Below are positions 47,215 to 62,226 of a DNA stretch of 64,000 nucleotides, piece by piece. The stretch lies in contig NC_092350.1 in NCBI RefSeq assembly GCF_963676685.1, positions 10,416,001 to 10,480,000 of the forward strand, written 5' to 3'. The position numbers and the translations under genes are program-made. The stretch's first letter is position 1. Each line of letters begins with the position of its first letter. The DNA comes from Mytilus edulis. Lineage: Eukaryota. The notes under the pieces are model-generated. The model searched no databases and was not told where the DNA came from. It was given only the letters and a program-made list of their open reading frames with translations.

Positions 47215-47792
<578 letters not shown>

Positions 47793-48565: not shown

Positions 48566-48998
48566 TATATTTATATGAAAATAAGGTCAAAGATTGTAAT
48601 TTGTGTGCGTAAATTATATAATATAATATATAGGACTGCAACTAATTTACACAACAAACGATACAAATATGCAACATTGACCACTAACAACTGAGTTTTT
48701 CTTCCTCTCGTGCTTGCGCATTTCCGTCGAATATACGTTATATGGTTGTATATTTTCTTGGACTTGTATAAGAAAAGAAAGAAAGAAAAAAAAGAAACAT
48801 GTCTTGTTCTTCATTTTTTTCACACCAACTATTGTAATATATAATAATAAAGTAGACACCTGTATATTGTTTGCAAAGAAAAAAGAAAACAGAAAATAAA
48901 AAGACAGAGAAATGGAGGGAGTGAGCTATGTTTGAGATTGCTTTCTGCATTCAACTAAATTGTACAACAAAATCAGATTCTTTTTGAAAAATGTTGGT

Positions 48999-49014
48999 GG
49001 CCCTGAAAAGGGCC
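48999..49014 (-). terminator. Histone H2A mRNA 3' stem-loop with downstream element
   Basis: GGCCCTTTTCAGGGCC-ACCA, then CAAAAAGAA. Confidence 0.95.
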
Positions 49015-49044
49015 GTTGTAAGTGAAGTTTCTGTTGTGTTGACT

Positions 49045-49428
<384 letters not shown>

Positions 49429-49475
49429 TTAATACGTTGTTTGACTTGAACAAGTATAAACAATGATTATCCCAA

Positions 49476-50101
49476 TATATATGTGGTGGTGTTTAACGAC
49501 CTTGACTGGCCTTTCAGCCCTCGCACGGTCGGCTCGGTGCCCGAAGGCGTTTGGTGAGCTTTAAATATTCTGGAGCCATGGGTCAGGAACAAGTAGTGGA
49601 GGTCGCAATATGGAGGCCGCCATCTTGGTTTTGGTGAGTTGTTTTTGGTTTTTGACTATTTTGTTGTTTATTCTTCACTAACGGCTGCTTTCAGGGCCAG
49701 TTTGGTCAGCTTGGCAGCCCGCTAGCCTCGATGATGGAGTACTGGTAGATGATCTCGGACGTAGTTCGAAAGATGACAGGAAGCATTATCAGGACCAAAG
49801 CCGTGAGGCAGTGAAATGAAGGTCGTATCACCCAACAGCCTAGGATACAGCCCTCGGACGTTAATCGGCATAACACTCCCCATAATACAATGGTTTTGGA
49901 GTGCATGTTAACGCGGGTACGCCAACTACTACGTCTATCTGTACGGCATGGATCGGTTTCTGTCATCTTAAGTAGTAAGTCGTTGATATCTAACTGTAAA
50001 CCCTCATCGAAGATAGCGGGTAAAGGAGAGCTGGCCCAGCACGTCCGTTCAGCTGTAATGACTGAGACGTGACTGGATTGTGTTTTGAATGGTAATGGAT
50101 G
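49476..50101 (-). mobile_element. Non-autonomous ~620-bp retroelement, copy U1 (subfamily A)
   Basis: Flanked by GATTATCCCAA (49465-49475, 50102-50112); 3' stem-loop plus TTAAAC tail. Confidence 0.85.
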
Positions 50102-50112
50102 GATTATCCCAA

Positions 50113-50165
50113 TATGTGGTGGTGTTTAACGACCTTGACTGGCCTTTCAGCCCTCGCACGGTCGG
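50113..50165 (-). mobile_element. ~55-bp mini-element S1 (3' stem-loop only)
   Basis: Matches the U1 3' end; flanked by ATTATCCCAA. Confidence 0.8.
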
Positions 50166-50176
50166 TATTATCCCAA

Positions 50177-50780
50177 TATGTGGTGGTGTTTAACGACCTT
50201 GACTGGCTATACAGCCCTCGCACGGTCGGCTCGGTGCCCGAAGACGATTGGTGAGCGTTTGAATAATTTCTGCCGTGGGTCAGGAACAAGAAGTAAGGAC
50301 GCCGAATGGAGGCCGCCATCTTGGTTTTGGTGAGTTGATTTTGGTTTGTTTACTATTTTGGATTTTACTTCTTAACAACGGCTGCTTTCAGGGCCAGTTT
50401 GGTCAGCTTGGCAGCCCGCTAGCCTCGATGATGGAGTACAGGTAGATGATCTCGGACGTAGTTCGAAAGATGACAGGAAGCATTATCAAGACCAAAGCCG
50501 TGAGGCAATGAAATGAAGGTCATATCACCCAACAGCCTAGGATACAGCCCTCGGACGTTAATCGGCATAACACTCCCCATAATACAATGGTTTTGGAGTG
50601 CATGTTAACGCGGGTACGCCAACTACTACGTCTATCTGTACGGCATGGATTGGTTTCTGTCATCTTAAGTAGTAAGTCGTTGATATCTAACTGTAAACCC
50701 TCATCGAAGATATCGGGTAAAGGAGAGCTGGCCCAGCACGTCCGTTCAGCTGTAATGACTGAGACGTGACTGAAAAAATT
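50177..50780 (-). mobile_element. Non-autonomous retroelement copy U2 (subfamily B-like)
   Basis: Flanked by GTATTATCCCAA (50165-50176, 50781-50792). Confidence 0.85.
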
Positions 50781-50792
50781 GTATTATCCCAA

Positions 50793-50848
50793 CAACAAAT
50801 GGAAGTTTTTAACGACCTTGACTGGCTATACAGCCCTTGCACGGTCGG
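50793..50848 (-). mobile_element. ~55-bp mini-element S2
   Basis: Tail matches U4; same 5' breakpoint as S1. Confidence 0.8.
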
Positions 50849-52812
50849 TATTATCCCAACTACTACTAAATAGAGTTTAATGGCGGCTACCCTTGCGGGT
50901 ATTGCGCCAGATTACCTTATATAAAAACATTTCAAGTAAATGTTTTAGAATTATCATTATTTAGGTATAAGCCTATATTATATATTCATATTATAGAAAT
51001 TTGTGAGTTTTTTTGTTTTTTTTCCCCTTAAATTTAATCTTATTTAAATCTGAACTATAGTGTTTATTTTAATTATCTTGATTATCTTTTGGTTAATTTA
51101 AAGTACGAAAAAGAAATATATGTGAACTTATTATTCCATCATTTGTAACTTAGCTTTCTTTGTTTATGAATATTAAATACATTGGTAAATAGGTGTGTTT
51201 GTTGTTTATACATGAAAAATGTAAGTATCTTATACTCTTTGATAGACATATCTGACTTTTACAAATATGCAAATCCTAGAAGGGGTCCGACATATTCCCG
51301 TACATGGTATATACATTAATACAATTATACCGCGGCTCGTACGTCCTTGGTAAACTGTGATTCTCTGTATATTGAATTTGACTAAAGATAGCACCCTCAC
51401 TTATAAAAGATTCTTGAACTTACGTTGTAGAATAAAAAAAATATATAATATATATATTACTGTGTATGTATAATTAGAATCTGTAATGTATTGTTATAAC
51501 ATATTTGTGTGTAATAAATTGCAAGTGTTGATATTGTGCAGTTATGTTCAGTATAGATACAAGAGAGTGCTATCTTGGTAGTACCTGATCTAGTGTACTA
51601 CTTCAAAAAATAAAAACTTTCGTAGAAGTTTTAGTGTATATTGTCAAATTCAACGGGGTTATGTTTCTTTTATTTAGAAATCATAAACTGATAAATGATA
51701 CCCTCCAGCTCTGTTACAACTTTTAAAAAGGCCAATATTTAGAAATGAAAAAACTAAAAAGAAAAGGTAAATAATATATTTCTACCAAATTATTTGTTTT
51801 TGGTGTCATCCGTTTAGACTGGAGTTGTTTCCCTTGCACTGTAAAGAAATAAATTGTAAATACCTGCAGCCGTTAAGCTACCACGTGGTAACCATGTGCT
51901 ACAGGCAGACAGGGCGAGAGGGCTGTAAACAAACAATTTCCAGTCTAAACGGATGAATTAGCAGCCGTGACTAAAAATGATAGACAATAATACCAATACA
52001 AGGTTAGTATTTACACGGTGCATTGTTTTTGGTCGTTGTAAAATATGCTGGTTGGTTCTAAAATCATCATATCACAAGGACCTGGGTTCTGGCAAGCCAG
52101 TGCCCTTAAAGAAAAATATCCCACAATAAGATAACTCATCTCGTCCGTCGACCCCATGTATAACCCTATCAATATTTTAGCTGCGGTGTCAATAGTTTAT
52201 CCATTGACAGCAGCTGAATCACATTCCTCATAGTGTTAGTTAGGTACTTATATATATACAATGTACATGCAGTTAATTCTTGTTGTGAGGTTTGTGTCCC
52301 CAATTTGATTTGGGATGGACCGACGAGAGAGTGCTTGTGATTGATGATTTCTGGGAGATATGTCAGACTCCTGTGGCTTGATATTTTACATATGATCTCA
52401 TGTATTTATCAGCAAGATGAGATTTATAATATTAAAAATCAACTGCTAATTATTTTAATCTAATTTATTTTCACTTTCTAACTTAGATTTTCTCTTATCT
52501 AGAGTTAATTTAATCGGTTGTTACAAATGTAATTAGTATTTTGAATATTTGAGATGCCTTGTCATACTTGTTAAAATCCATGGGTTGTTGTCCAGTGACT
52601 AATATTTCAAAGTTTTATTTTAGAAATAAGTAATTTTACTAGGCCTATAGTTTATGTCATTTTTCTTTTCCTATACTAATAATATCTGTAGGTTTTCTAA
52701 CCCCTACCAAAAATATCTTATTAAAATAATTATAAGCATGTTTTTACAAAATTTACACTAGAAACTAGAAATATATATTGAGGTTTTTTGTATTTTCTGA
52801 ATAATTTTACTT

Positions 52813-54561
52813 TTATCGCATACCCGTGTTTATTAAATAATCCCATATTGGGATAAGGGTCTGAGAATATCCTGAAAATAAATTTTTATACGAGAGATCT
52901 TTTACACCGGTTGATTCAAACTTTTCCATCATTTTATGTCTTTGTGGTATGTACTTATTACAGTTAAACAGGTAGTGTTGCATGTCGTCCACTACTAAAC
53001 ATGTGTCACACAGTTCACTATTACATTTACCCATTGTGTATTTGAATTTATTAGTGAATATATAACTTGATCTAAGTTTAAATAGAGTTCTTTCTCTTTC
53101 TCTTGTACTCTTTGGTATGGTAATACAAAAGTTAACATCTTTTTGAATAGCGTGTAGTTGTTTACTTTTAGTGTTGTTTTCCCAGTATTGTTGCCACATT
53201 TTTTTTAATAAATTTTTACATAAACATTTGATATCTTCTTTGTAAAGTGGTATACTAGTTATACATGTCTCTATTGATAGAGCCTTTTTAGCTGCTGTGT
53301 CTGCCATTTCATTACCACTTAAACCCACATGACTGGGTATCCATTCTAAAATTATATTCAAACCTAATTTGGACAGTTTACTGTATATATATTGGATGTC
53401 ATAAATTATTTGTGTTTTAACTTTAAATATACTTCCTGTAATAGCTTTTAGTGCTGACAGTGAATCTACAAATATTACAGTATTTTCTGGTTGAAATTCT
53501 TCTAACCAATATAAAGATAAAAGTATGGCTGTCAATTCACACATAAATATTGAAACATGATTTTGTAATTTAAAACCTTTTTTTACTTTAAGTTCTGGAA
53601 CGACAAAAGCACATGCATTTGTGTTGTTTTCTGGATTCTTAGATCCATCTGTATATATTTTTAAAAAATTACTATACTTGTTATCAATGAGGATATTTCC
53701 TTCACTTTTAATTAGGTGAGGACTATCCTTTTTAGTAATAATATTTGTAAGTTCCGTTTTGACCTGTGGTTTTAGAACATGCCATGGTGGGGTAGGGAAC
53801 TCTTTACATTTGTATACAGTATTAATATCTACATTATATTTATTCATAGTATCATGTGCAGTAACACAATATGGTTTTTGATTTTCTTTAATTTTTTCCT
53901 TATTAAATTCATATATAGCATTTTCTTGTAAACTTTTTATAGTTGGGTTTGTGTCATTTAGACTAAATATATTCAAAAAAGACTTAGTAATAAGACTTTT
54001 TCTTCTCAACCCATATGGGGGGTCACCAATTTCAGTCTGTAATCCACTTATACTGGCAGTTTTATGAGCACCTGCACATATCCTTAATGCTTGGGCTTGA
54101 ATACTATCTAGTTTTTTCTTGACAGAGTAGGAGGCTGAGTTATAAACCTCACAGCCATAATCTATCTTTGACCTTATCATTGATATATATATTGTTCTCA
54201 GGGTAGAACAATTTGCACCCCATTTAGTACCAGTTAATAATTTCATGCAGTTCAACACCCTTGAACATCTACTTTCTATATATTGTACATGTTTTAACCA
54301 TGTTAGTTTTGAATCGAAAATCATACCTAGAAACTTGACTTCTTTAACAAATGACAATATTGTTTCTCCAAGTTTAAGTTTAATACAAGGAGAACTACTC
54401 TTACTAAATATCATAGCTACCGTTTTTGTTTGTGATATTAGGAAACCCCATTTATCACACCAAGTATTAATTGTGTCTATATCCTCTTGCATTCTTTTTT
54501 GTAGATATTTAGAACTTTTTCCAGATAACCATATGGCACTGTCATCAGCAAATTGTGACAT
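52813..54561 (-). CDS. LINE ORF2 C-terminal part: RT (FADD), RNase H, CCHC
   Basis: FADD, YTDGS, CELTAI, VDSLSAL, WIPSHVGLSGNEMAD, CDTC..H..C. Confidence 0.92.
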   Translation of the reverse strand: MSQFADDSAIWLSGKSSKYLQKRMQEDIDTINTWCDKWGFLISQTKTVAMIFSKSSSPCIKLKLGETILSFVKEVKFLGMIFDSKLTWLKHVQYIESRCSRVLNCMKLLTGTKWGANCSTLRTIYISMIRSKIDYGCEVYNSASYSVKKKLDSIQAQALRICAGAHKTASISGLQTEIGDPPYGLRRKSLITKSFLNIFSLNDTNPTIKSLQENAIYEFNKEKIKENQKPYCVTAHDTMNKYNVDINTVYKCKEFPTPPWHVLKPQVKTELTNIITKKDSPHLIKSEGNILIDNKYSNFLKIYTDGSKNPENNTNACAFVVPELKVKKGFKLQNHVSIFMCELTAILLSLYWLEEFQPENTVIFVDSLSALKAITGSIFKVKTQIIYDIQYIYSKLSKLGLNIILEWIPSHVGLSGNEMADTAAKKALSIETCITSIPLYKEDIKCLCKNLLKKMWQQYWENNTKSKQLHAIQKDVNFCITIPKSTRERERTLFKLRSSYIFTNKFKYTMGKCNSELCDTCLVVDDMQHYLFNCNKYIPQRHKMMEKFESTGVKDLSYKNLFSGYSQTLIPIWDYLINTGMR

Positions 54562-54572
54562 AGCACAGTACT

Positions 54573-56630
54573 TTAAATTATTGGATATATATAATCATTC
54601 ACCATGATGTTAAATAGTGTAGGACTTATACAACTACCCTGTGGTGTACCATTCTGAATTATAAATATTTCAGAGTAAGTATTATTAACTTTAACTTGTA
54701 TAGTTCTGTCACTAAGAAAATCCTTTACCCATCCCAACATATTACCCCTTATACCTATTGAAGCCATTTTTATTAATAACCCATTTTTCCATAGCATATC
54801 AAATGCCTTTTGGAAATCTATAAATACACCAACTGTGAAATGTTTTTTGAGAAATGCTTTATGAATATCATTATCAATTCTAATTATTTGTTCCATAGTA
54901 TTTCTATTTTTCCTAAATCCACTTTGATTTGGTGTGTAGAAATTATTTTTTTCTAGATACCAACGTAGTCTATTATTAACCATTTTCTCCATAATTTTTA
55001 CAAAATTAGAAGTAAGGGCTATTGGTCTATATGACTGTGGGTCTGTGGGGTTTTTTCCAGGTTTAAGTACTGGTGATATAATGGAATGTTTCCATTCACT
55101 TGGAAGTTTTTGTAAAAACCAAACTCTATTGATAAAAAGTAATAACACAGACAGTGATTTGTCTGTAAATTGTTTGAACATAGAATACGTAATTTTATCT
55201 TTTCCAGGGGAGGTATCAGATGTATCACTGATAGCATCTTTTAATTCTTGCATAGTATATGGTTCATTATAACTATCAGAGTTATCCTTATAATAGTGTA
55301 ATAATTTACTGTACTCCTTTTGATCAATATCTTGTTTCTGATTTTTAAATTTTTCTGAGTAATTATGGTCACTACTGACTTGAGCATAATTTGTAGCAAG
55401 TATATCTGCTTTGTCTTGAGTAAATTCATATTTGGTATTATTATATAACAGGGTTGGTAAATTTAATTTTTTAAATGTTTTACCCAACATTGATTTTACT
55501 TTTTTCCATACATCTGATAATTTAGTATCATTATTGAGAGAGTTACAGTAGCTCTCCCAATACATAGCTTGTGCAGCTTTGATAGTTTTTCTGCACGTTC
55601 TTTCTTTTTCTCTATATATAGTGAAATCAATACCAAGACCTGAATGTTGGGCACGGTTTTTACAGGTGTTCCTTTCTTTAACACATTTAGTGCATTCAGG
55701 TGTCCACCATGGTACCTGTGGTTTTTTAGGTTTATTATTTTTTAATTTGACTGGGATGCACTCCCCAGCTATTTTGAGTATTTTGTTTGTTAGTCTTGAA
55801 CATGTTTCTTCTATATTGTCAGAAATCATGTCAGGACTCAAATGTTCATTACACTTGCTGGAGAATGCCTCCCAGTCTGCTTTCTTATAATTATATACAG
55901 ATTCAGTTTCATCAATTTGCATTTGTTTATGGCTAAAACTAATATTTACAACATGATGGTCACTGCCATAGGAACTAATGAGGTCAACTGACCATGTTAA
56001 TTTACTAGCTAAACTAGAATTACAAAAAGACAAATCAATAGGTGACAGTTCTAATGTACTGGGGTTACATCTTGTACCTGTACCATCATTAAGAAGTACT
56101 ATATCTTTATACTCAAGGAAAGAGAACAGCTCTCTTCCCTTAGTATCTATATTTTTACCGCCCCACATAGTGTGGTGGGCATTAAAGTCTCCACATAGTA
56201 TAAATTTTCCCTCTATTTGATCAAATATATTGTTATAATGGGGTAGTTTTGTATTTGATGCTGTGTCATAAAGATTGACCAGTGTAATATTATTATTATC
56301 AAAACTAAATTCAATACATGATATTTCTAAATCACTGTTAATATTCTTTTTCAGATATGGAAGATTTTCTCTGACATATATAGCTGTACCTCCATGTGAT
56401 TTGGTATTACGTACAGAAAAATCAGCTATTTTATAACCTATTACATGTGGATGATCTTGTTCGTTTTTACACCATGTTTCCTGGAAGCAAATAATATCAG
56501 GCTTCATTTGTGACATAGCTATATACGCCGCAGCATTGTTGTTAATGCCGCGACAGTTCCAATGAACAACACTGAACATTATGTTATATAATAATAAACA
56601 TGATAAATAAATAGTATAATTGATAGCCAT
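54573..56630 (-). CDS. LINE ORF2 N-terminal part: APE endonuclease and RT, frameshifted at ~54590
   Basis: WNCRG, FQETW, GDFNAH, SDH, YRPIALT, QSGFR, DFQKAFD, GTPQG. Confidence 0.92.
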   Translation of the reverse strand: MAINYTIYLSCLLLYNIMFSVVHWNCRGINNNAAAYIAMSQMKPDIICFQETWCKNEQDHPHVIGYKIADFSVRNTKSHGGTAIYVRENLPYLKKNINSDLEISCIEFSFDNNNITLVNLYDTASNTKLPHYNNIFDQIEGKFILCGDFNAHHTMWGGKNIDTKGRELFSFLEYKDIVLLNDGTGTRCNPSTLELSPIDLSFCNSSLASKLTWSVDLISSYGSDHHVVNISFSHKQMQIDETESVYNYKKADWEAFSSKCNEHLSPDMISDNIEETCSRLTNKILKIAGECIPVKLKNNKPKKPQVPWWTPECTKCVKERNTCKNRAQHSGLGIDFTIYREKERTCRKTIKAAQAMYWESYCNSLNNDTKLSDVWKKVKSMLGKTFKKLNLPTLLYNNTKYEFTQDKADILATNYAQVSSDHNYSEKFKNQKQDIDQKEYSKLLHYYKDNSDSYNEPYTMQELKDAISDTSDTSPGKDKITYSMFKQFTDKSLSVLLLFINRVWFLQKLPSEWKHSIISPVLKPGKNPTDPQSYRPIALTSNFVKIMEKMVNNRLRWYLEKNNFYTPNQSGFRKNRNTMEQIIRIDNDIHKAFLKKHFTVGVFIDFQKAFDMLWKNGLLIKMASIGIRGNMLGWVKDFLSDRTIQVKVNNTYSEIFIIQNGTPQGSCISPTLFNIMVNDYIYPII

Positions 56631-56675
56631 TTTTAATTGTATATTGTTAATACTTTATATTGGGCGATAAATGAA

Positions 56676-57914
56676 TTATATCATTTCAGTTGTAACTCTA
56701 CTAGCCATTTCCAAACCTAATGAGAGATCAAAATTTGACCCAAACATCTGTTTTACAACTATTCCTACAAAACCCATAATTGACTTTAAAGTAAAGTCTA
56801 TGGGTTTAGTAGGAGGGCTCATAGTCTGGTGCATGACAACACTAATTACAGTTACCAAGTCTTGTATGGTACATTTATCTTTTTTGGGTGGTACTGAGCT
56901 CTGATCTTTTGGGGTTTTGCTAGTTGATTTAGAGCTTTCTTTATGATGTTCATTGATTTTAAGCTGGTTTGTTGCTTGTTGTAGTGAAATATTTTTAGAT
57001 TTCACCAGCTTAAGGGCCATTTTTTGTTGGGTCCTTTGTGGACATTCTTTGTCATTAGACATATGTTTACCTTTACAGTTTACACATTTTAAATCTGTTG
57101 AGGTACATTGCTCGTTCTCATGTTCCTCTCCACATTTAATACATCTTTTTTTATTTCTACATTGGTTTGCCATATGCCCAAACCCCTGACATTTATAGCA
57201 TTGAATAGGTTTAGGTACAAATAATTTGGTATTATATGTTTTGTACCCAATATTGATTGTTGCTGGTAGCTGGGGTGTCTGAAAGAATAACTTTATGGAT
57301 CTAGATGGTTTTCTTTCACCGATTTGTTTGTCAAAGTAGGACATCCTTTGAATTTTACTAACTTTCTGGGCTTTAAGCACCGACACGATATCTTCGTCTT
57401 CAACGTTAATGTCTAGAGGCACGTTATAAATAACTCCTATTGATGAAGTTACAGATTTGGGCACACTTGTCCTAATCTGTAATTCACCAATGAGTTTGAC
57501 GCGTTTTAGCTGTTTCCACTGCGATTTGTCAATGCACTCTACTAGTATTTTCCCACTGTTAAGTGGTTTAATTCTTTTTGGGGTACCAACAGTCTCAAGG
57601 AGAATCTTTTGGATTTTTATCTGATTTTGGGTGCTAAGTTTAGTATTGGGATCAACACTCTGTAGGACTAGTAAATACTCATTACCTTTTACTGAGGGTG
57701 TATGGGGGAGAGGGGAAGGTGTATTAAGGAGGGTATTATCATTTAGGGGAGATGTACTTGCCATTCTTTTTCGTCTTTTCCTCTGTGTGGACCAGCCATG
57801 TTTTTCATATTCAGAGGATTCCATGTCTGTGGTATCAGTTTCATTGAGGGACTTATAAAATTCTTCCTCATCGAACTGACCAGAAATTGTTTTGTCCATA
57901 ATGTCGGACAACAA
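56676..57914 (-). CDS. LINE ORF1 gag-like protein with three zinc knuckles (first ATG at 57899)
   Basis: CYKCQGFGHMANQC, CIKCGEEHENEQC, CVNCKGKHMSNDKEC. Confidence 0.92.
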   Translation of the reverse strand: MLSDIMDKTISGQFDEEEFYKSLNETDTTDMESSEYEKHGWSTQRKRRKRMASTSPLNDNTLLNTPSPLPHTPSVKGNEYLLVLQSVDPNTKLSTQNQIKIQKILLETVGTPKRIKPLNSGKILVECIDKSQWKQLKRVKLIGELQIRTSVPKSVTSSIGVIYNVPLDINVEDEDIVSVLKAQKVSKIQRMSYFDKQIGERKPSRSIKLFFQTPQLPATINIGYKTYNTKLFVPKPIQCYKCQGFGHMANQCRNKKRCIKCGEEHENEQCTSTDLKCVNCKGKHMSNDKECPQRTQQKMALKLVKSKNISLQQATNQLKINEHHKESSKSTSKTPKDQSSVPPKKDKCTIQDLVTVISVVMHQTMSPPTKPIDFTLKSIMGFVGIVVKQMFGSNFDLSLGLEMASRVTTEMI

Positions 57915-58156
57915 AGAATATTGGTGAACACTTTTCAGTAGACAAGAAAAGTTGAGTATCTAACTATAATAATACTATAATAATACTGAATAAATTATTC
58001 AGATAGCAGACAATATCAATTATTTAATATTCTCAAAAAAATATCTGAAATATAAGACTATAAACACAAAATATAATGATATATTCTAATTCAGTGCAGT
58101 GCTACAAAAACACGACCGTGATGATCCGGGACTCACAACCCGAGGTATTATCCCAA

Positions 58157-59684
58157 ATATATGTGGTGGTGTTTAACGACCTTGACTGGCCTTTCAGCCC
58201 TCGCACGGTCGGCTCGGTGCCCGAAGGCGTTTGGTGAGCTTTAAATATTCTGGAGCCATGGGTCAGGAACAAGTAGTGGAGGTCGCAATATGGAGGCCGC
58301 CATCTTGGTTTTGGTGAGTTGTTTTTGGTTTTTGACTATTTTGTTGTTTATTCTTCACTAACGGCTGCTTTCAGGGCCAGTTTGGTCAGCTTGGCAGCCC
58401 GCTAGCCTCGATGATGGAGTACTGGTAGATGATCTCGGACGTAGTTCGAAAGATGACAGGAAGCATTATCAGGACCAAAGCCGTGAGGCAGTGAAATGAA
58501 GGTCGTATCACCCAACAGCCTAGGATACAGCCCTCGGACGTTAATCGGCATAACACTCCCCATAATACAATGGTTTTGGAGTGCATGTTAACGCGGGTAC
58601 GCCAACCGCTACGTCTATATGTACGGCATGGATCGGTTTCTGTCATCTTAAGTAGGTGTAAGACATAATAATGTCCTTATAAAATAATGTCCATTGCCAT
58701 GGAATGATGTCCCTCAAAAGGACAGATTTTTACTGCTAACTATATGAAATAGTGTCCACTCACAGGACAAATTTTCATAGTAGTTGCTGTTAAATTGTAA
58801 GGGAAGTAATACAAAGGTCATTACAAAGTTTTATTATACTTGAATTTTAATTAAAATATGAAGGATTGATGAGAAATTGATCAATGTACAAATGTAAACA
58901 AATAAATAATGGATGGAAGTGAATATAGAGAAATTTAAGTTCCTAGAAATTCCCAGCAAATGGAAATGACAATGAAAGAATAACAATAAGAAGGAAGTGT
59001 AAAATCAAATATGAAGAACTTTATAATATGTATTATGTCAGATAACTTGCGGAAGGCAATAGAAAATAAATAATGTCCATTGCCATAAAATATTGTCTCC
59101 ATGAAATATGGTCCATCTGCAGAACAAATTTTCGTAGTGAATGTTATTCAATTGTGTACTCAAAGGAAAATAAAATGGAACAGCATCTAACATGTATATA
59201 ATTATATTAAAAAATATAGATATGAAGATAAGGATGGTAGGAGTGCCAATGAGACAATTTTTATGTCAAAGTAACAATTAATTCAAGTTCGTAATTAAAG
59301 TTAAAATGCGTCCAGTAATAAAAAGGCAATGGATATCATTTAATACTTTAATCATATAAAAAAATGACCTGGCGGACACAATGTCCTGTGAAATAAAGGT
59401 CCATGTGGACATATTATGGTAGCGAAAAATGTCTATGTTCATGGACACTTTTTCATACCTGAGGACATGTTTTCATAGGAAATTGTGTCCAGGACACATT
59501 TAAATAAGTAAATATTGTCAAAATGTGTCCGGTGGACATTTTTTCATGGAGGACATTATTAAATCCTACATAGTAAGTCGTTGATATCTAACTGTAAACC
59601 CTCATCGAGGATAGCGGGTAAAGGAGAGCTGGCCCAGCACGTCCGTTCAGCTGTAATGACTGAGACGTGACTGATGAAATGAAT
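58157..59684 (-). mobile_element. Non-autonomous retroelement copy U3 (subfamily A), interrupted by a MITE
   Basis: Near-identical to U1; flanked by TATTATCCCAA (58146-58156, 59685-59695). Confidence 0.85.
58657..59570. mobile_element. 914-bp non-autonomous DNA transposon with TGT..ACA termini
   Basis: 21-bp imperfect TIR tgtaagacataataatgtcct / aggacattattaaatcctaca; many subterminal tgtcc/ggaca motifs; tagg/tagt flanks. Confidence 0.8.
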
Positions 59685-59695
59685 TATTATCCCAA

Positions 59696-60322
59696 CAACA
59701 AATGGAAGTGTTTAACGACCTTGACTGGCTATACAGCCCTCGCACGGTCGGCTCGGTGCCCGAAGGCGATTGATGAGCATTTAAATATTTTCTGCCGTGG
59801 GTCAGGAACAGGTAGTAAGGACGCCGAATGGAGGCCGCCATCTTGGTTTTGGTGAGTTGATTTTGGTTTTTTACTATTTTGATGTTATTCTTCACAACGG
59901 CTGCTTTCAGGGCCAATTTGGTCAGCTTGGCAGCCCGCTAACCTCGATGATGGAGTACTGGTAGATGAATCGTGGACGTAGTTTTAAAGATGACAGGAAG
60001 CGTTATCAGGACCAAAGCCGTGAGGCAGTAAAATGAAGGTCGTATCACCCAACAGCCTAGGATACAGCCCTCGGACGTTAATCGGCATAACACTCCCCAT
60101 GATACAATGGTTTTGGAGTGCATGTTAACGCGGGAACGCCAACACCTACGTCTATCTGTACGGCATGGATTGGTTTCTGTCATCTTAAGAAGTAAGTCGT
60201 TGATCATCTAACAATAAACCCTCATCGAAGATAGCGGGTAAAGGAGAGCTGGCCCAGCACGTCCGTTCAGCTGTAATGACTGAGACGTGACTGAATGGAT
60301 TGAATCCAAAATGGATTGAATG
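59696..60322 (-). mobile_element. Non-autonomous retroelement copy U4 (subfamily B), promoter-proximal
   Basis: Flanked by TATTATCCCAA (59685-59695, 60323-60333). Confidence 0.85.
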
Positions 60323-60555
60323 TATTATCCCAAGAGGTGGTAGTTTACTATTTATACCCGCAAAACGGATTGAAAGATGTTTCAGTTCTAAACCAATCAA
60401 ATCATCGCTTCTTCCAGGTAGTTAGGTTGAATGTTAGAAGGTGCTCTCTCCGAAGTTCGCGTTAAGTAAAAACTTTCAATCCGTTTTGCCGAGTATAAAT
60501 AGAAATTTTTATTAACGGCCATCATTCACTGATTACATTTCAGAGAGTATACATC
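60323..60555. promoter_or_regulatory. Bidirectional H2A/H2B-type histone promoter
   Basis: Divergent TATAAATA boxes (60356-60349 minus; 60494-60501 plus), each preceded by CTTTCAATCCGTTTTGC. CCAAT at 60393. ATCATTC cap motif at 60521-60527, about 30 nt from the plus-strand TATA. Confidence 0.8.
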
Positions 60556-60930
60556 TGTCTGTATTTAACTAATCACCACAAATAGTTAAACATGTCAGGA
60601 ATCTAATCACCACATTTAGTTAAACATGTCAGGCATGGATTAGATAATAAAATGTCGAATCAGAAAATGTATTGACTAATGTGAAAATCTGTATATATGT
60701 TTGTTCCGTCTGTGTATATGTTCTTCATGTGTGTATTTATAAACTGTTTTGTGTGATCAACGAAATTTGACGTTCACAAAGAAAAAGGCGGGGAAGAGAA
60801 ACAAAGCATTTACTGACTTAAGTATAAGCAACCCACTTGCACAAGCACTACTTTTTTCCTTTCCCCACCTCACCTTTCTATTATCCATATGTGTTTAACT
60901 TTTTGTTCATTATAACAATATAAAACAAAT

Positions 60931-62226
60931 ATGAATGTGATATATTCAAGAGCCGCCTCAGATGGCGAAGAAGGGATAAAAATAGGGAAAATGATCCCAA
61001 GGCCCTGTACCCTGCTAATACAATCTGATTACGAATCACATAAAATCACATCGGCAGAAATGCTACATTACATTAATAGCGAGATAAATCTTGAAATATC
61101 AGCCCTCATATGCTATTTTCAATCAACTGGTATAAACAAGTTCTCGGCCTCTTTTAGAGATGAACATGCAAAAGACATCTTCCAAGATACATTTAGCGAT
61201 AAAATAGAGATTCAAGATATTACATTTAATGTAGAACAAGCAGAACCCCTACAATGGGGGAAAAAAAAAAAAACTATTGACATTACTTTGTTTGGTATAC
61301 CATATGAATTAAAACCAGAGTACATAAGAAACAAAATGCAAAAATATGTAGATATAAGGGAAATAAAATATAACAACTACAAAGATTTCCCCGATATATC
61401 CAGTGGGGTCGTTACTGTTGTAGCAAACAGTATTAAAGAGGATATACCCAAAAAGATATATATAAAAGGGCAACAGATATCTACTCGATATGAAGGCCAG
61501 CCACACGGCAAAAAGTGTTTTAATTGCCAAGCATATGGACATATCTCAAAAGATTGTCCAGAGCCACAAGGTAGAATCTGGGGTTCAGCAAGAACCCACC
61601 CTACTAGAACAAGAACAAATAGTAGTGAGTCCCTATCCACACAAGACTCACAAGAATCCCAAGATTCACAAGAAACCACAATTGTAAACTCAGGGGAAAT
61701 AGAGGTAGAAATCTACCATGAAAAGGAAACATTAGAAATAACCCAAACTAACACTTCCGATTCCACCCCCTTAGAAGAAACTCTAAACGAATCAAAGAGC
61801 AGCAATGAGTCAATTGATCATGAAATCATAATCACACAAGCTCTTGAAGTCAAATTTGATAAACCTCAGTCAGAGACTGAAAAAATAAATGAAAAACAAA
61901 AAGGTAAAAAAAAGCCAAACCAAACTGATTACAATGATCTGATGGACGATTTAACAGAGATATTGGGCTCAGTTTCTGAGTCAGAGCCCGAAAATAATGA
62001 AACAGAAGAACAGCAAATAGAAAATAAAGAGTCGAATGCCAAATCTGGAGCCTCAGTGGCTCAAGGAAAAGGTACGACCCAAACCAAAAAAGAAAAAGTC
62101 CTAACAGACAAAGAAAAAAAGAGAGCAAGAACAGAAAGACAAAGAATCGAAAAAAGGAAAAATCTAAGTGATAGCGAAAATGAAGTAGAAAAAAGGAAGC
62201 CAGTGGCAAAGAAACAGATAAAATAA
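60931..62226 (+). CDS. L1/Tx1-type LINE ORF1 with a single CCHC knuckle
   Basis: TLFGIPYEL..IPKKIYIKG..RYEGQP..CFNCQAYGHISKDC and a charged C-terminus. Confidence 0.85.
   Translation: MNVIYSRAASDGEEGIKIGKMIPRPCTLLIQSDYESHKITSAEMLHYINSEINLEISALICYFQSTGINKFSASFRDEHAKDIFQDTFSDKIEIQDITFNVEQAEPLQWGKKKKTIDITLFGIPYELKPEYIRNKMQKYVDIREIKYNNYKDFPDISSGVVTVVANSIKEDIPKKIYIKGQQISTRYEGQPHGKKCFNCQAYGHISKDCPEPQGRIWGSARTHPTRTRTNSSESLSTQDSQESQDSQETTIVNSGEIEVEIYHEKETLEITQTNTSDSTPLEETLNESKSSNESIDHEIIITQALEVKFDKPQSETEKINEKQKGKKKPNQTDYNDLMDDLTEILGSVSESEPENNETEEQQIENKESNAKSGASVAQGKGTTQTKKEKVLTDKEKKRARTERQRIEKRKNLSDSENEVEKRKPVAKKQIK

What the first reader, a model, noticed from the sequence alone, without database searches (positions are those of the whole stretch)
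49680..49699. Non-coding element carries a segment antisense to the histone mRNA stem-loop
Seen in all four U copies (49680-49699, 50376-50396, 58360-58379, 59894-59915). The element-sense strand reads TGGCCCTGAAAgcaGCCGTT(G), versus the reverse complement of the H2A stem-loop TGGCCCTGAAAaggGCCGTTG (18/21). A nearby GTGAAG in U1, U3 and U4 also matches H2A 3' UTR. The three changes break the element's own hairpin but leave most pairing to histone mRNA. Inference: the RNA could pair with nascent histone transcripts to localise the RNP at histone loci or compete with SLBP; it could also be just a captured relic.
Basis: partly seen in the sequence, partly recalled or inferred. Interest (0 to 1): 0.85.

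Follow-up and report, generated by a model that had tools for sequence, protein, structure and literature searches.

The report
Histone stem-loop relic in mussel retroelement
A young, abundant, non-coding retroelement in a mussel-type genome carries a ~30-base patch antisense to the tail of histone H2A/H2B messages; the match is real and the RNA is made from the predicted strand, but no test here shows a function, so it is most likely a fossil.

Summary
All four U copies carry the same 20-mer on the minus strand, 17/20 to the antisense histone stem-loop. The similarity extends into the histone 3' UTR tail (28/33 to an H2A type, 29/35 to an H2B type) and stops at the mature mRNA 3' end. None of 507 natural 600-nt pieces of this genome comes near that score against histone mRNA ends.

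U is a ~600-bp dispersed non-autonomous non-LTR retroelement with at least 415 to 905 copies, 8-13 bp target duplications and a 5' truncation gradient.

The functional idea is not supported:
- The patch is no better conserved than the element's body.
- No histone-like intermediates exist.
- U is absent from 30 other H2A genes and 30 kb more of flanking and array sequence on chromosome 7.
- Tandem stacking also occurs at non-histone sites.
- Pairing is favourable in silico (net about -15 kcal/mol) and accessibility is average, so pairing is not excluded.

Best reading: an inert captured relic (0.55). Rivals: chance or an own structural element (0.25), functional antisense (0.08). Interest is low to moderate.

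The parts
49666..49699 (-). Histone-like patch in U1: the 20-mer 49680-49699 plus an extension into the 3' UTR-tail homology. Antisense to histone mRNA in the U RNA.
   Evidence: 29/35 to major-unit H2B; 23/27 ungapped to chr7 H2B
50365..50396 (-). Histone-like patch in U2 (20-mer 50377-50396).
   Evidence: 28/33 to major-type H2A; 0/200 shuffles reach the score
58360..58379 (-). Motif in U3.
59890..59915 (-). Histone-like patch in U4 (20-mer 59896-59915).
49476..50075 (-). U1, a full-length copy of the ~600-bp non-autonomous retroelement. In the minus sense the 5' end starts CAGTCACG and the 3' end finishes ...CCACCACATATATA.
50177..50773 (-). U2, a full-length copy of a second subfamily (94% to U1).
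58157..59673 (-). U3 (99% to U1), interrupted at 58656-59562 by a ~0.9-kb insertion.
59696..60297 (-). U4, a full-length copy of a third subfamily with a different 3' tail.
50113..50165 (-). A 5'-truncated U fragment holding only the 3'-terminal ~54 nt. A second one lies at 50793-50848. Both are cut at the same base.
49507..49525 (-). 3'-domain hairpin of U. Its loop is GAAA-type in U1/U3 and GUAU-type in U2/U4. Whole-RNA folds pair it with the motif.
48974..49422 (-). Histone H2A gene (49422..49045) with its 3' stem-loop (49019..48974). This is the local sequence the patch was compared with.
49466..49475 (.). Target-site duplication ATTATCCCAA at the H2A transcription start. RNA 5' ends pile up at 49468. 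Further copies sit at 50103, 50167, 50783, 50850, 58147, 59686 and 60324.
50860..58145 (-). A 7.3-kb LINE in the same stack, with a CCHC ORF1 and an APE-RT-RNase H ORF2 broken in two. It lacks the motif and has no 3' homology to U.
60334..60432 (-). The displaced H2A promoter. The TATAAATA box is at 60356..60349.
   Evidence: identical to intact paralogues once the stack is removed

Best explanation
U is a young, expressed, non-autonomous non-LTR retroelement of about 600 bp. Shown: it is transcribed from the minus strand. Inferred: transcription starts from an internal 5' promoter-like end, and the RNA is copied into new sites by a LINE reverse transcriptase through target-primed reverse transcription. 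That mechanism would account for the observed 8-13 bp target duplications, 5' truncations, extra 5' nucleotides and frequent tandem re-use of an insertion site.

At the junction between its conserved 5' body and an A-rich linker, U carries a 27-35-nt patch. The patch descends from the last ~30 nt of an H2A/H2B-type histone mRNA (3' UTR tail plus stem-loop, ending at the mature 3' end) and sits in antisense orientation. Three adjacent substitutions have destroyed the hairpin.

The patch is a fossil of one old capture or recombination event in the family's master copy. It is carried passively by all descendants, and its presence beside a histone gene in this window is a coincidence of insertion. 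The route by which an antisense patch was captured is not shown.
For: Similarity:
- It is specific to histone mRNA 3' ends and far above natural background: 38/39/32 against a maximum of 28 in 507 pieces, and 0/200 shuffles.
- It covers non-hairpin flanks (AACGGC, CTTCAC, GTTTAT) and stops at GGGCCA, the mature mRNA end.

Family nature:
- There are at least 905 candidate copies at 92-100% identity on all chromosomes, with target duplications.
- Exact-word counts rise 144, 152, 204, 415 from the 5' to the 3' end.
- There is no tRNA or Rfam hit.

Strand: RNA reads are about 98% minus-sense.

Passive carriage:
- 204 genomic copies hold the motif with GCA almost invariant.
- No copy has a histone-like stem.
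- Variability of the patch equals that of the element body.
- The hairpin is broken.

No histone targeting:
- No U lies near 30 other H2A genes or in 30 kb more of chromosome 7.
- Histone arrays are about 0.1% of the genome (237 H2A matches in units of 5.74 kb), so roughly 0.4-0.9 U sites are expected there by chance.
- Tandem U pairs occur at non-histone sites.
Against: - Known template-switch chimeras join RNAs sense to sense. I have no demonstrated mechanism for an antisense internal patch.
- No intermediate or ancestral copies were found, so descent from a histone mRNA rests on similarity alone.
- With thousands of repeat families in a genome, one such match by chance is not negligible. 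My estimate is of order 0.2 per genome, from a Gumbel fit I made by hand to the null.
- The patch is invariant in four diverged subfamily copies while the next 25 nt vary. This is also what a constrained element would show.
- Pairing with H2A/H2B 3' ends is energetically favourable, and the half of the patch complementary to the UTR tail lies in an accessible linker.
Confidence: 0.55

Rival explanations
1. Chance or convergent resemblance. The motif is part of U's own RNA architecture: a GC-rich arm pair around a GAAA-type loop. It resembles the antisense of any histone stem-loop because that antisense is itself a GNRA hairpin. It never came from a histone gene.
For: - U has a second, similar CUGAAAG hairpin in its 3' domain, and whole-RNA folds pair the motif with it at probabilities of 0.7-0.99.
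- In an 81-nt local fold the GCAGCCGUU half of the motif pairs with an upstream GCGGGCUGC stretch.
- No histone-like intermediates exist.
- Whole-unit alignment scores of this size are common for natural sequence.
- The hypothesis was formed after seeing the data.
Against: - The match includes 13-20 nt outside the hairpin (AACGGC, CTTCAC, GTTTAT), and none of 507 natural pieces comes within 4 score units of even the weakest U copy.
- The match ends exactly at the histone mRNA 3' end.
- The predicted internal helices show no covariation, and their energies do not differ from shuffles for the local folds (z -1.0 and -1.1).
Confidence: 0.25
2. Functional antisense. U RNA base-pairs with the 3' end of H2A/H2B (pre-)mRNAs. 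This would tether the retroelement RNP at histone loci, compete with SLBP, or disturb 3' processing.
For: - The RNA has the right polarity and is expressed.
- Duplex energy is -39 to -40 kcal/mol, about -14.6 net of opening costs for H2A and H2B, and weaker for H3 and H4 at -7 to -9.
- The UTR-complementary half lies next to a very accessible linker that could serve as a toehold.
- The patch is invariant in all four window copies and in RNA reads.
- Six U insertions sit at an H2A transcription start.
Against: - The patch has no conservation beyond that of the element body.
- No U lies at 30 other H2A genes or in 30 kb more of chromosome 7, and the number of U sites in histone arrays matches chance expectation.
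- The same stack holds a LINE without the motif, and tandem stacking occurs elsewhere.
- There are no chimeric joints, and no variant letters in the patch.
- The histone stem-loop costs 13-14 kcal/mol to open. In vivo it is also bound by SLBP, which is established knowledge and was not tested here.
- Three mismatches sit in the middle of the duplex.
Confidence: 0.08
3. Small-RNA route. The antisense patch makes U transcripts and histone mRNAs ping-pong partners or siRNA substrates. This would yield histone-derived or histone-targeting piRNAs.
For: - A sense and an antisense RNA with 24-29 nt of near-complementarity are both expressed.
- Histone-derived piRNAs made by ping-pong partners are described in a mosquito (PMC5416884; title and abstract seen).
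Against: - No small-RNA data were available here.
- The three central mismatches would weaken slicing.
- Nothing in the sequence points specifically to this route.
Confidence: 0.04
4. The plus-strand, sense-like copy acts as a histone-type 3' processing or SLBP-binding signal for antisense or host transcripts.
For: The plus strand keeps the AAC flank, the loop and the 3' arm of the stem-loop.
Against: - The stem is broken. It gives no Rfam Histone3 hit even at E up to 10, and its fold energy does not differ from shuffles.
- There is no histone downstream element after it.
- Only about 1-2% of reads over the patch, and up to about 7% elsewhere in U, come from that strand.
Confidence: 0.02

Closest known systems
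Host-RNA fragments captured by LINE machinery (U6-L1 and other template-switch chimeric retrocopies; 3'/5' transduction by L1 and SVA). From my own knowledge, not tested here.
   Same: A short piece of an abundant cellular RNA, ending at that RNA's mature 3' end, is embedded in a retroelement and copied with it.
   Different: Known chimeras join the pieces sense to sense at an element end. Here the piece is antisense, internal, only ~30 nt long and fixed in a whole family.
Stringent-type LINE/SINE pairs that share a 3' hairpin and a short tail (for example eel UnaL2/UnaSINE1). From my own knowledge.
   Same: U is non-coding, has a conserved 3' hairpin domain and a short non-poly(A) tail, and shows target duplications and 5' truncation.
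   Different: U has no Pol III (tRNA, 5S or 7SL) head. No partner LINE with a shared 3' end was identified; the neighbouring 7.3-kb LINE has none.
U7 snRNA
   Same: A small non-coding RNA stretch complementary to the 3' region of histone pre-mRNA.
   Different: U7 pairs with the element downstream of the cleavage site, not with the stem-loop. U's complementarity stops at the mRNA end. No Rfam family above threshold matches U, U7 included.
LTR12 retroviral repeats bearing histone-pre-mRNA-like motifs that are repressed by U7 snRNA (PMC11417402; abstract seen)
   Same: A transposable-element family carries a motif borrowed from, or resembling, the histone 3' processing region.
   Different: There the motif is sense-like and has an experimentally shown effect. 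Here it is antisense to the stem-loop and untested.
Alu-containing lncRNAs that pair with Alu elements in mRNA 3' UTRs to trigger Staufen-mediated decay, and TE-derived piRNAs that target the nanos 3' UTR. From my own knowledge.
   Same: A transposable-element RNA base-pairs with a host mRNA 3' UTR.
   Different: Those act through long imperfect duplexes or small RNAs and have shown effectors. No effector or interaction is shown here.
Tandem double insertions of transposable elements at one site (described for Drosophila). From my own knowledge.
   Same: Several elements lie head to tail, each bounded by the same target duplication.
   Different: This concerns the context of the stack, not the motif.

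Membership tests
Histone 3' UTR stem-loop (Rfam RF00032) | A 6-bp stem with a 4-nt loop that scores above the family threshold. | tested here: not met
   No Histone3 hit in 49440-50120 on either strand even at E up to 10. The true H2A and H3 loops score 41.3 and 40.1 bits. The plus-strand fold gives -6.5 kcal/mol, z -0.4.
Histone 3' UTR stem-loop (Rfam RF00032) | A purine-rich downstream element (the U7 binding site) within ~15 nt after the loop. | tested here: not met
   The histone genes share ...ACCAACATTTTTCAAAAAGA... after the loop. U reads GTTTGGTCAGC there, with no similarity.
U7 snRNA | A 5' region complementary to the histone downstream element, an Sm-type site and a 3' hairpin, matching the Rfam model. 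| tested here: not met
   No Rfam hit at gathering threshold in the window, or at E up to 10 in U. Complementarity ends at the mRNA 3' end.
Non-LTR, LINE-dependent non-autonomous retroelement | Dispersed copies flanked by variable target-site duplications. | tested here: met
   There are at least 905 candidates on all chromosomes. Duplications of 8-13 bp with different sequence are readable at most of the 29 loci inspected.
Non-LTR, LINE-dependent non-autonomous retroelement | Common 3' end with 5' truncation. | tested here: met
   Exact-word counts from the 5' to the 3' end are 144, 152, 204, 415. There are 739 against 394 candidates for the two terminal 150-mers. Short 3'-terminal fragments occur in the window and elsewhere.
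Non-LTR, LINE-dependent non-autonomous retroelement | Transcribed in the sense given by its ends. | tested here: met
   Stranded RNA reads are about 98% minus-sense. The direction was calibrated on the H2A 5' UTR, where 72 molecules end at the predicted start site 49468.
Non-LTR, LINE-dependent non-autonomous retroelement | 3' end shared with an autonomous LINE partner. | tested here: inconclusive
   U has no significant 3' homology to the 7.3-kb LINE of the same stack.
Classical SINE | A Pol III head derived from tRNA, 5S or 7SL RNA. | tested here: not met
   ARAGORN finds no tRNA. There is no Rfam hit at E up to 10 apart from a chance miRNA match.
Functional antisense regulator of histone mRNA (working definition) | The complementary stretch is conserved beyond its surroundings. 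| tested here: not met
   The patch has 2 minority calls over 32 copies, and 8 of 30 windows of 20 nt have 3 or fewer. The variant-free block in RNA reads is 70 nt long, of which the motif is only the first 20.
Functional antisense regulator of histone mRNA (working definition) | The stretch is accessible and the duplex is favourable. | tested here: inconclusive
   The net energy is about -14.6 kcal/mol for H2A and H2B. The opening cost of 10.1 kcal/mol equals the median of U windows, and the adjoining linker is open. All of this is in silico and leaves SLBP out.
Functional antisense regulator of histone mRNA (working definition) | Physical association with histone transcripts or histone loci. 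| not testable with these tools
   Indirect evidence only: no enrichment of U near 30 other H2A genes and no read joints.

The most novel reading that the evidence does not exclude
The patch is kept because it works. U RNA uses an accessible toehold against the single-stranded tail of H2A/H2B 3' UTRs to invade the stem-loop. It would thereby dock the retroelement RNP in the histone locus body during S phase, displace SLBP, or seed histone-directed small RNAs. That would be a transposon exploiting the one animal mRNA class with a unique, universally conserved 3' end.
Probability: 0.07. Interest if true: 0.8.

Novelty: new member of a known kind. Interest (0 to 1): 0.3.

Why it matters
If the patch is only a fossil, it is a tidy example of a retroelement family carrying a tiny piece of a host message. 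It also shows how proximity to a histone gene can make such a piece look meaningful. The useful by-product is a characterised, expressed, very young non-autonomous retroelement family of a mussel-type genome, with a known sense strand, known ends and a habit of stacking at one site.

If the patch were functional, it would be the first transposon RNA aimed at the histone stem-loop, which is the binding site of SLBP and the hallmark of replication-dependent histone mRNAs. That would link transposon activity to S phase or to the histone locus body, and it can be tested with existing interactome and small-RNA methods.

Tried and rejected
- Rfam on the whole window and, permissively, on U gave only the two true histone stem-loops and one chance miRNA hit. 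U is therefore not an snRNA, SL RNA, tRNA-SINE or hammerhead element. I had first considered a spliced-leader or snRNA gene because of a GGTGAGT and Sm-like stretch on the plus strand. This was rejected by the minus-strand transcription and the target duplications.

- Plus strand as the element's sense, suggested by the variable ATGGATTGA-like stretch at the high-coordinate end that looks like a 3' tail. This was rejected by the RNA strand, the truncation gradient and the 3'-terminal fragments. The stretch is then extra sequence at 5' junctions.

- The neighbouring 7.3-kb LINE as U's parent or partner: no shared 5' or 3' sequence.

- A search for histone-like intermediates found none.

- A cross-species test was not possible:
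  - A metagenome scan for the 20-mer returned three unrelated bacterial contigs.
  - The 86-aa ORF of U, used as a handle, found only the same element in one Logan contig.
  - A second organism in the run list holds U with one difference in 593 nt, too close to be informative.

- A significance test against whole histone units with natural sequence as the null is uninformative because of AT-rich spacer matches. It was replaced by a test against mRNA 3' ends.

- Covariation in the predicted helices could not be assessed because the motif and the helix cores are invariant.

- Two script calls returned no answer and were rerun.

- The 86-aa ORF (49966..49706) is intact in 24/32 young copies, but no relatives of it were found outside this element. 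I treat it as non-coding.

Full report
WHAT IS THERE

The only other match with up to three mismatches in the window is the real H2A stem-loop, on the other strand. The H2A gene (49422..49045), the H3 gene (47625..47215) and their Rfam Histone3 stem-loops are all on the minus strand. The plus strand of each U copy therefore reads like a sense histone 3' end with three adjacent changes in the 5' arm of the stem. The minus strand reads as its antisense.

The resemblance goes beyond the 20-mer. The best local alignment of every U copy to histone repeat units always falls on a 3' UTR tail plus stem-loop:
- 23/27 ungapped to H2B of the chromosome-7 array;
- 28/33 for U2 against the H2A type that is commonest in the genome;
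- 29/35 for U1 against the H2B of that commonest unit.

The resemblance stops at GGGCCA, within about three bases of where histone mRNAs end. Nothing resembles the downstream processing element.

IS IT MORE THAN CHANCE?

Against the nine distinct 50-nt histone mRNA ends found in this genome, U1, U2 and U4 score 38, 39 and 32. For comparison, 507 natural 600-nt pieces of the same genome give mean 21.2, sd 2.2 and a maximum of 28. Markov shuffles of U2 never reach its score against whole units (0/200). Natural sequence often scores as high against whole units, but only through AT-rich spacer matches, so that comparison is uninformative.

From a Gumbel fit I made by hand to the null, I put the per-piece probability at about 3e-5. 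Over a whole genome's repeat library that leaves a chance expectation of order 0.2. Real descent from a histone mRNA end is therefore likely but not certain.

WHAT U IS

U is a dispersed repeat.
- The genome search finds at least 905 candidate places, with the best 40 at 92-100% identity on all large contigs.
- Copies are bounded by 8-13-bp target duplications of unrelated sequence.
- There is no tRNA, snRNA or other Rfam family in it.
- Exact-word counts rise along the minus strand: 144 near the high-coordinate end, 152 in the middle, 204 at the motif and 415 near the low-coordinate end. The terminal 150-mers give 394 against 739 candidates.
- Short fragments holding only the low-coordinate ~54 nt occur in the window and elsewhere.

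This is the 5' truncation pattern of target-primed reverse transcription, with the minus strand as sense.

A public stranded RNA data set settles the strand. Over U1 the depth is 112-225 in one direction and 0.4-13 in the other. The H2A 5' UTR in the same stretch, which must be minus-sense, lies entirely in the majority direction, with 72 molecules ending at 49468. That position is 30 nt downstream of the TATA box of intact paralogues.

In the minus sense, U starts with CAGT and has a GGACGTG about 29 nt further on. This is reminiscent of the initiator and downstream promoter element of insect LINEs. It is an inference from the sequence and was not tested.

U has no sequence in common with the 7.3-kb LINE next to it, and its partner remains unknown.

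TESTS OF THE FUNCTIONAL IDEA

Conservation:
- In an alignment of 32 copies the motif has 2 minority calls, and 8 of 30 windows of 20 nt have 3 or fewer.
- In RNA reads the variant-free block runs from 49680 to 49750, so the motif is simply the first 20 nt of a 70-nt invariant stretch. The T-rich segment on its other side is full of variants and indels.
- The four window copies, which belong to three subfamilies, agree with this picture.
- Copies are so young that post-insertion conservation says little. The comparison between subfamilies shows no special constraint on the motif.

History:
- 204 genomic copies hold the motif with its flanks, and the three changed bases are GCA in nearly all of them.
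- The only variants are single-base changes, and no copy has a histone-like stem within two mismatches.

Structure:
- Alone, the motif folds weakly: -6.3 kcal/mol, z -1.0. The H2A loop gives -11.4.
- In folds of whole U RNA the two arms of the motif pair with the 3'-domain hairpin at probabilities of 0.7-0.99. Opening the 20 nt costs 9-11 kcal/mol. That is exactly the median for 20-nt windows of U1.
- The linker just downstream costs only 1-5 kcal/mol to open.
- The motif is thus neither specially buried nor specially exposed.

Energetics:
- The duplex with H2A or H2B 3' ends is -39 to -40 kcal/mol.
- Opening the histone end costs 13-14 kcal/mol and opening U about 11, which leaves about -14.6.
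- For H3 and H4 the net is -7 to -9.
- Pairing is possible on paper. SLBP binding in vivo is not modelled.

Localisation:
- H2A occurs in at least 237 places, in 5.74-kb tandem units. That is about 0.1% of the genome, so 0.4-0.9 U sites are expected there by chance.
- Thirty other H2A genes with 1.5-kb flanks, and 30 kb more of chromosome-7 sequence beside the window (20 kb of the histone array and 10 kb upstream), contain no U.

THE LOCAL STACK

The window's U copies belong to one stack. Removing 49476-60322 restores exactly the promoter and 5' UTR of intact paralogues. Each of the seven insertions (four U, two U fragments, one LINE) is bounded by the same 10-bp duplication at the H2A start site.

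This looks like histone targeting, but three points speak against that:
- The stack includes a LINE without the motif.
- Tandem U pairs, and tandem 3' fragments, occur at several non-histone places.
- Copies of the LINE are also found head to tail elsewhere.

Re-use of an insertion site is therefore a habit of these elements, not evidence for guidance by the patch.

VERDICT

The interpretation that the RNA acts on histone transcripts is not supported by conservation, distribution or read evidence, although thermodynamics and accessibility do not exclude it.

The most likely reading is an inert, degenerate fossil of a histone H2A/H2B mRNA 3' end fixed in the master copy of a young non-autonomous retroelement (0.55). 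The next most likely is a chance or structural resemblance (0.25). How an antisense patch would have been captured is unexplained, and this is the main weakness of the favoured reading.

LIMITS

- No genomes of other molluscs could be reached.
- The organism is called a blue mussel in earlier notes of this scan. I did not verify that, but the 1.37-Gb assembly fits a mussel-type genome.

Noticed in passing
49466-60333: Seven retroelements (four U, two 54-nt U fragments, one 7.3-kb LINE) are stacked head to tail between the TATA box (60356..60349) and the start site (49468) of one H2A gene. Each is bounded by the same 10-bp duplication ATTATCCCAA. Joining the two sides reproduces the intact promoter of paralogues exactly.
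   Followed up: yes
49424-49476: About half of the RNA reads covering the H2A 5' UTR do not stop at the start site. In addition, 59 of 122 reads cross 49475 with a 2-nt deletion. This suggests U1-to-H2A read-through transcripts in the sequenced animal. Such an RNA would hold the antisense patch and the true stem-loop in one molecule.
   Followed up: partly
U 5' junctions, e.g. 50076-50102, 60298-60322; L002-L030: Between the 5' end of U (CAGTCACG in the minus sense) and the target duplication lie 0-30 extra bases. They have a recurring ATGGATTGA-like composition on the plus strand and differ in every copy. Their origin is unexplained.
   Followed up: partly
50113-50165 and 50793-50848: Two U fragments from different subfamilies are truncated at exactly the same base, at the foot of the 3'-domain hairpin. 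Pairs of such short 3' fragments 49-66 bp apart also occur on other chromosomes. This points to a preferred stop or processing point.
   Followed up: partly
58656-59562: A ~0.9-kb AT-rich insertion with inverted-repeat-like ends interrupts U3. It carries many repeats of an AATGTCC/GGACA motif and looks like a small DNA transposon.
   Followed up: no
50860-58145: A full-length 7.3-kb LINE lies on the minus strand. It has a CCHC ORF1, and its ORF2 is split near 54561-54573 into an APE-RT piece and an RT-RNase H piece. Its 3' UTR is nearly 2 kb long and ends in TAGTAGTAG. There are about 50 copies, some head to tail elsewhere.
   Followed up: partly
60334-62226: The other side of the bidirectional histone promoter has a TATAAATA box on the plus strand near 60495-60505. 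It is followed not by H2B but by unrelated sequence and a second LINE ORF1 with a CCHC knuckle (60931-62226).
   Followed up: no
L031-L060 and L061-L062: The genome has two H2A unit types with identical protein but different promoters and 3' UTR tails. The commoner type makes up 28 of 30 sampled genes. The window's type is found in the chromosome-7 array.
   Followed up: partly
49706-49966 (minus strand): An 86-aa ORF ends 7 nt before the motif. It is intact in 24 of 32 young copies, has no relatives outside this element, and is cysteine- and arginine-rich. It is probably not coding.
   Followed up: partly
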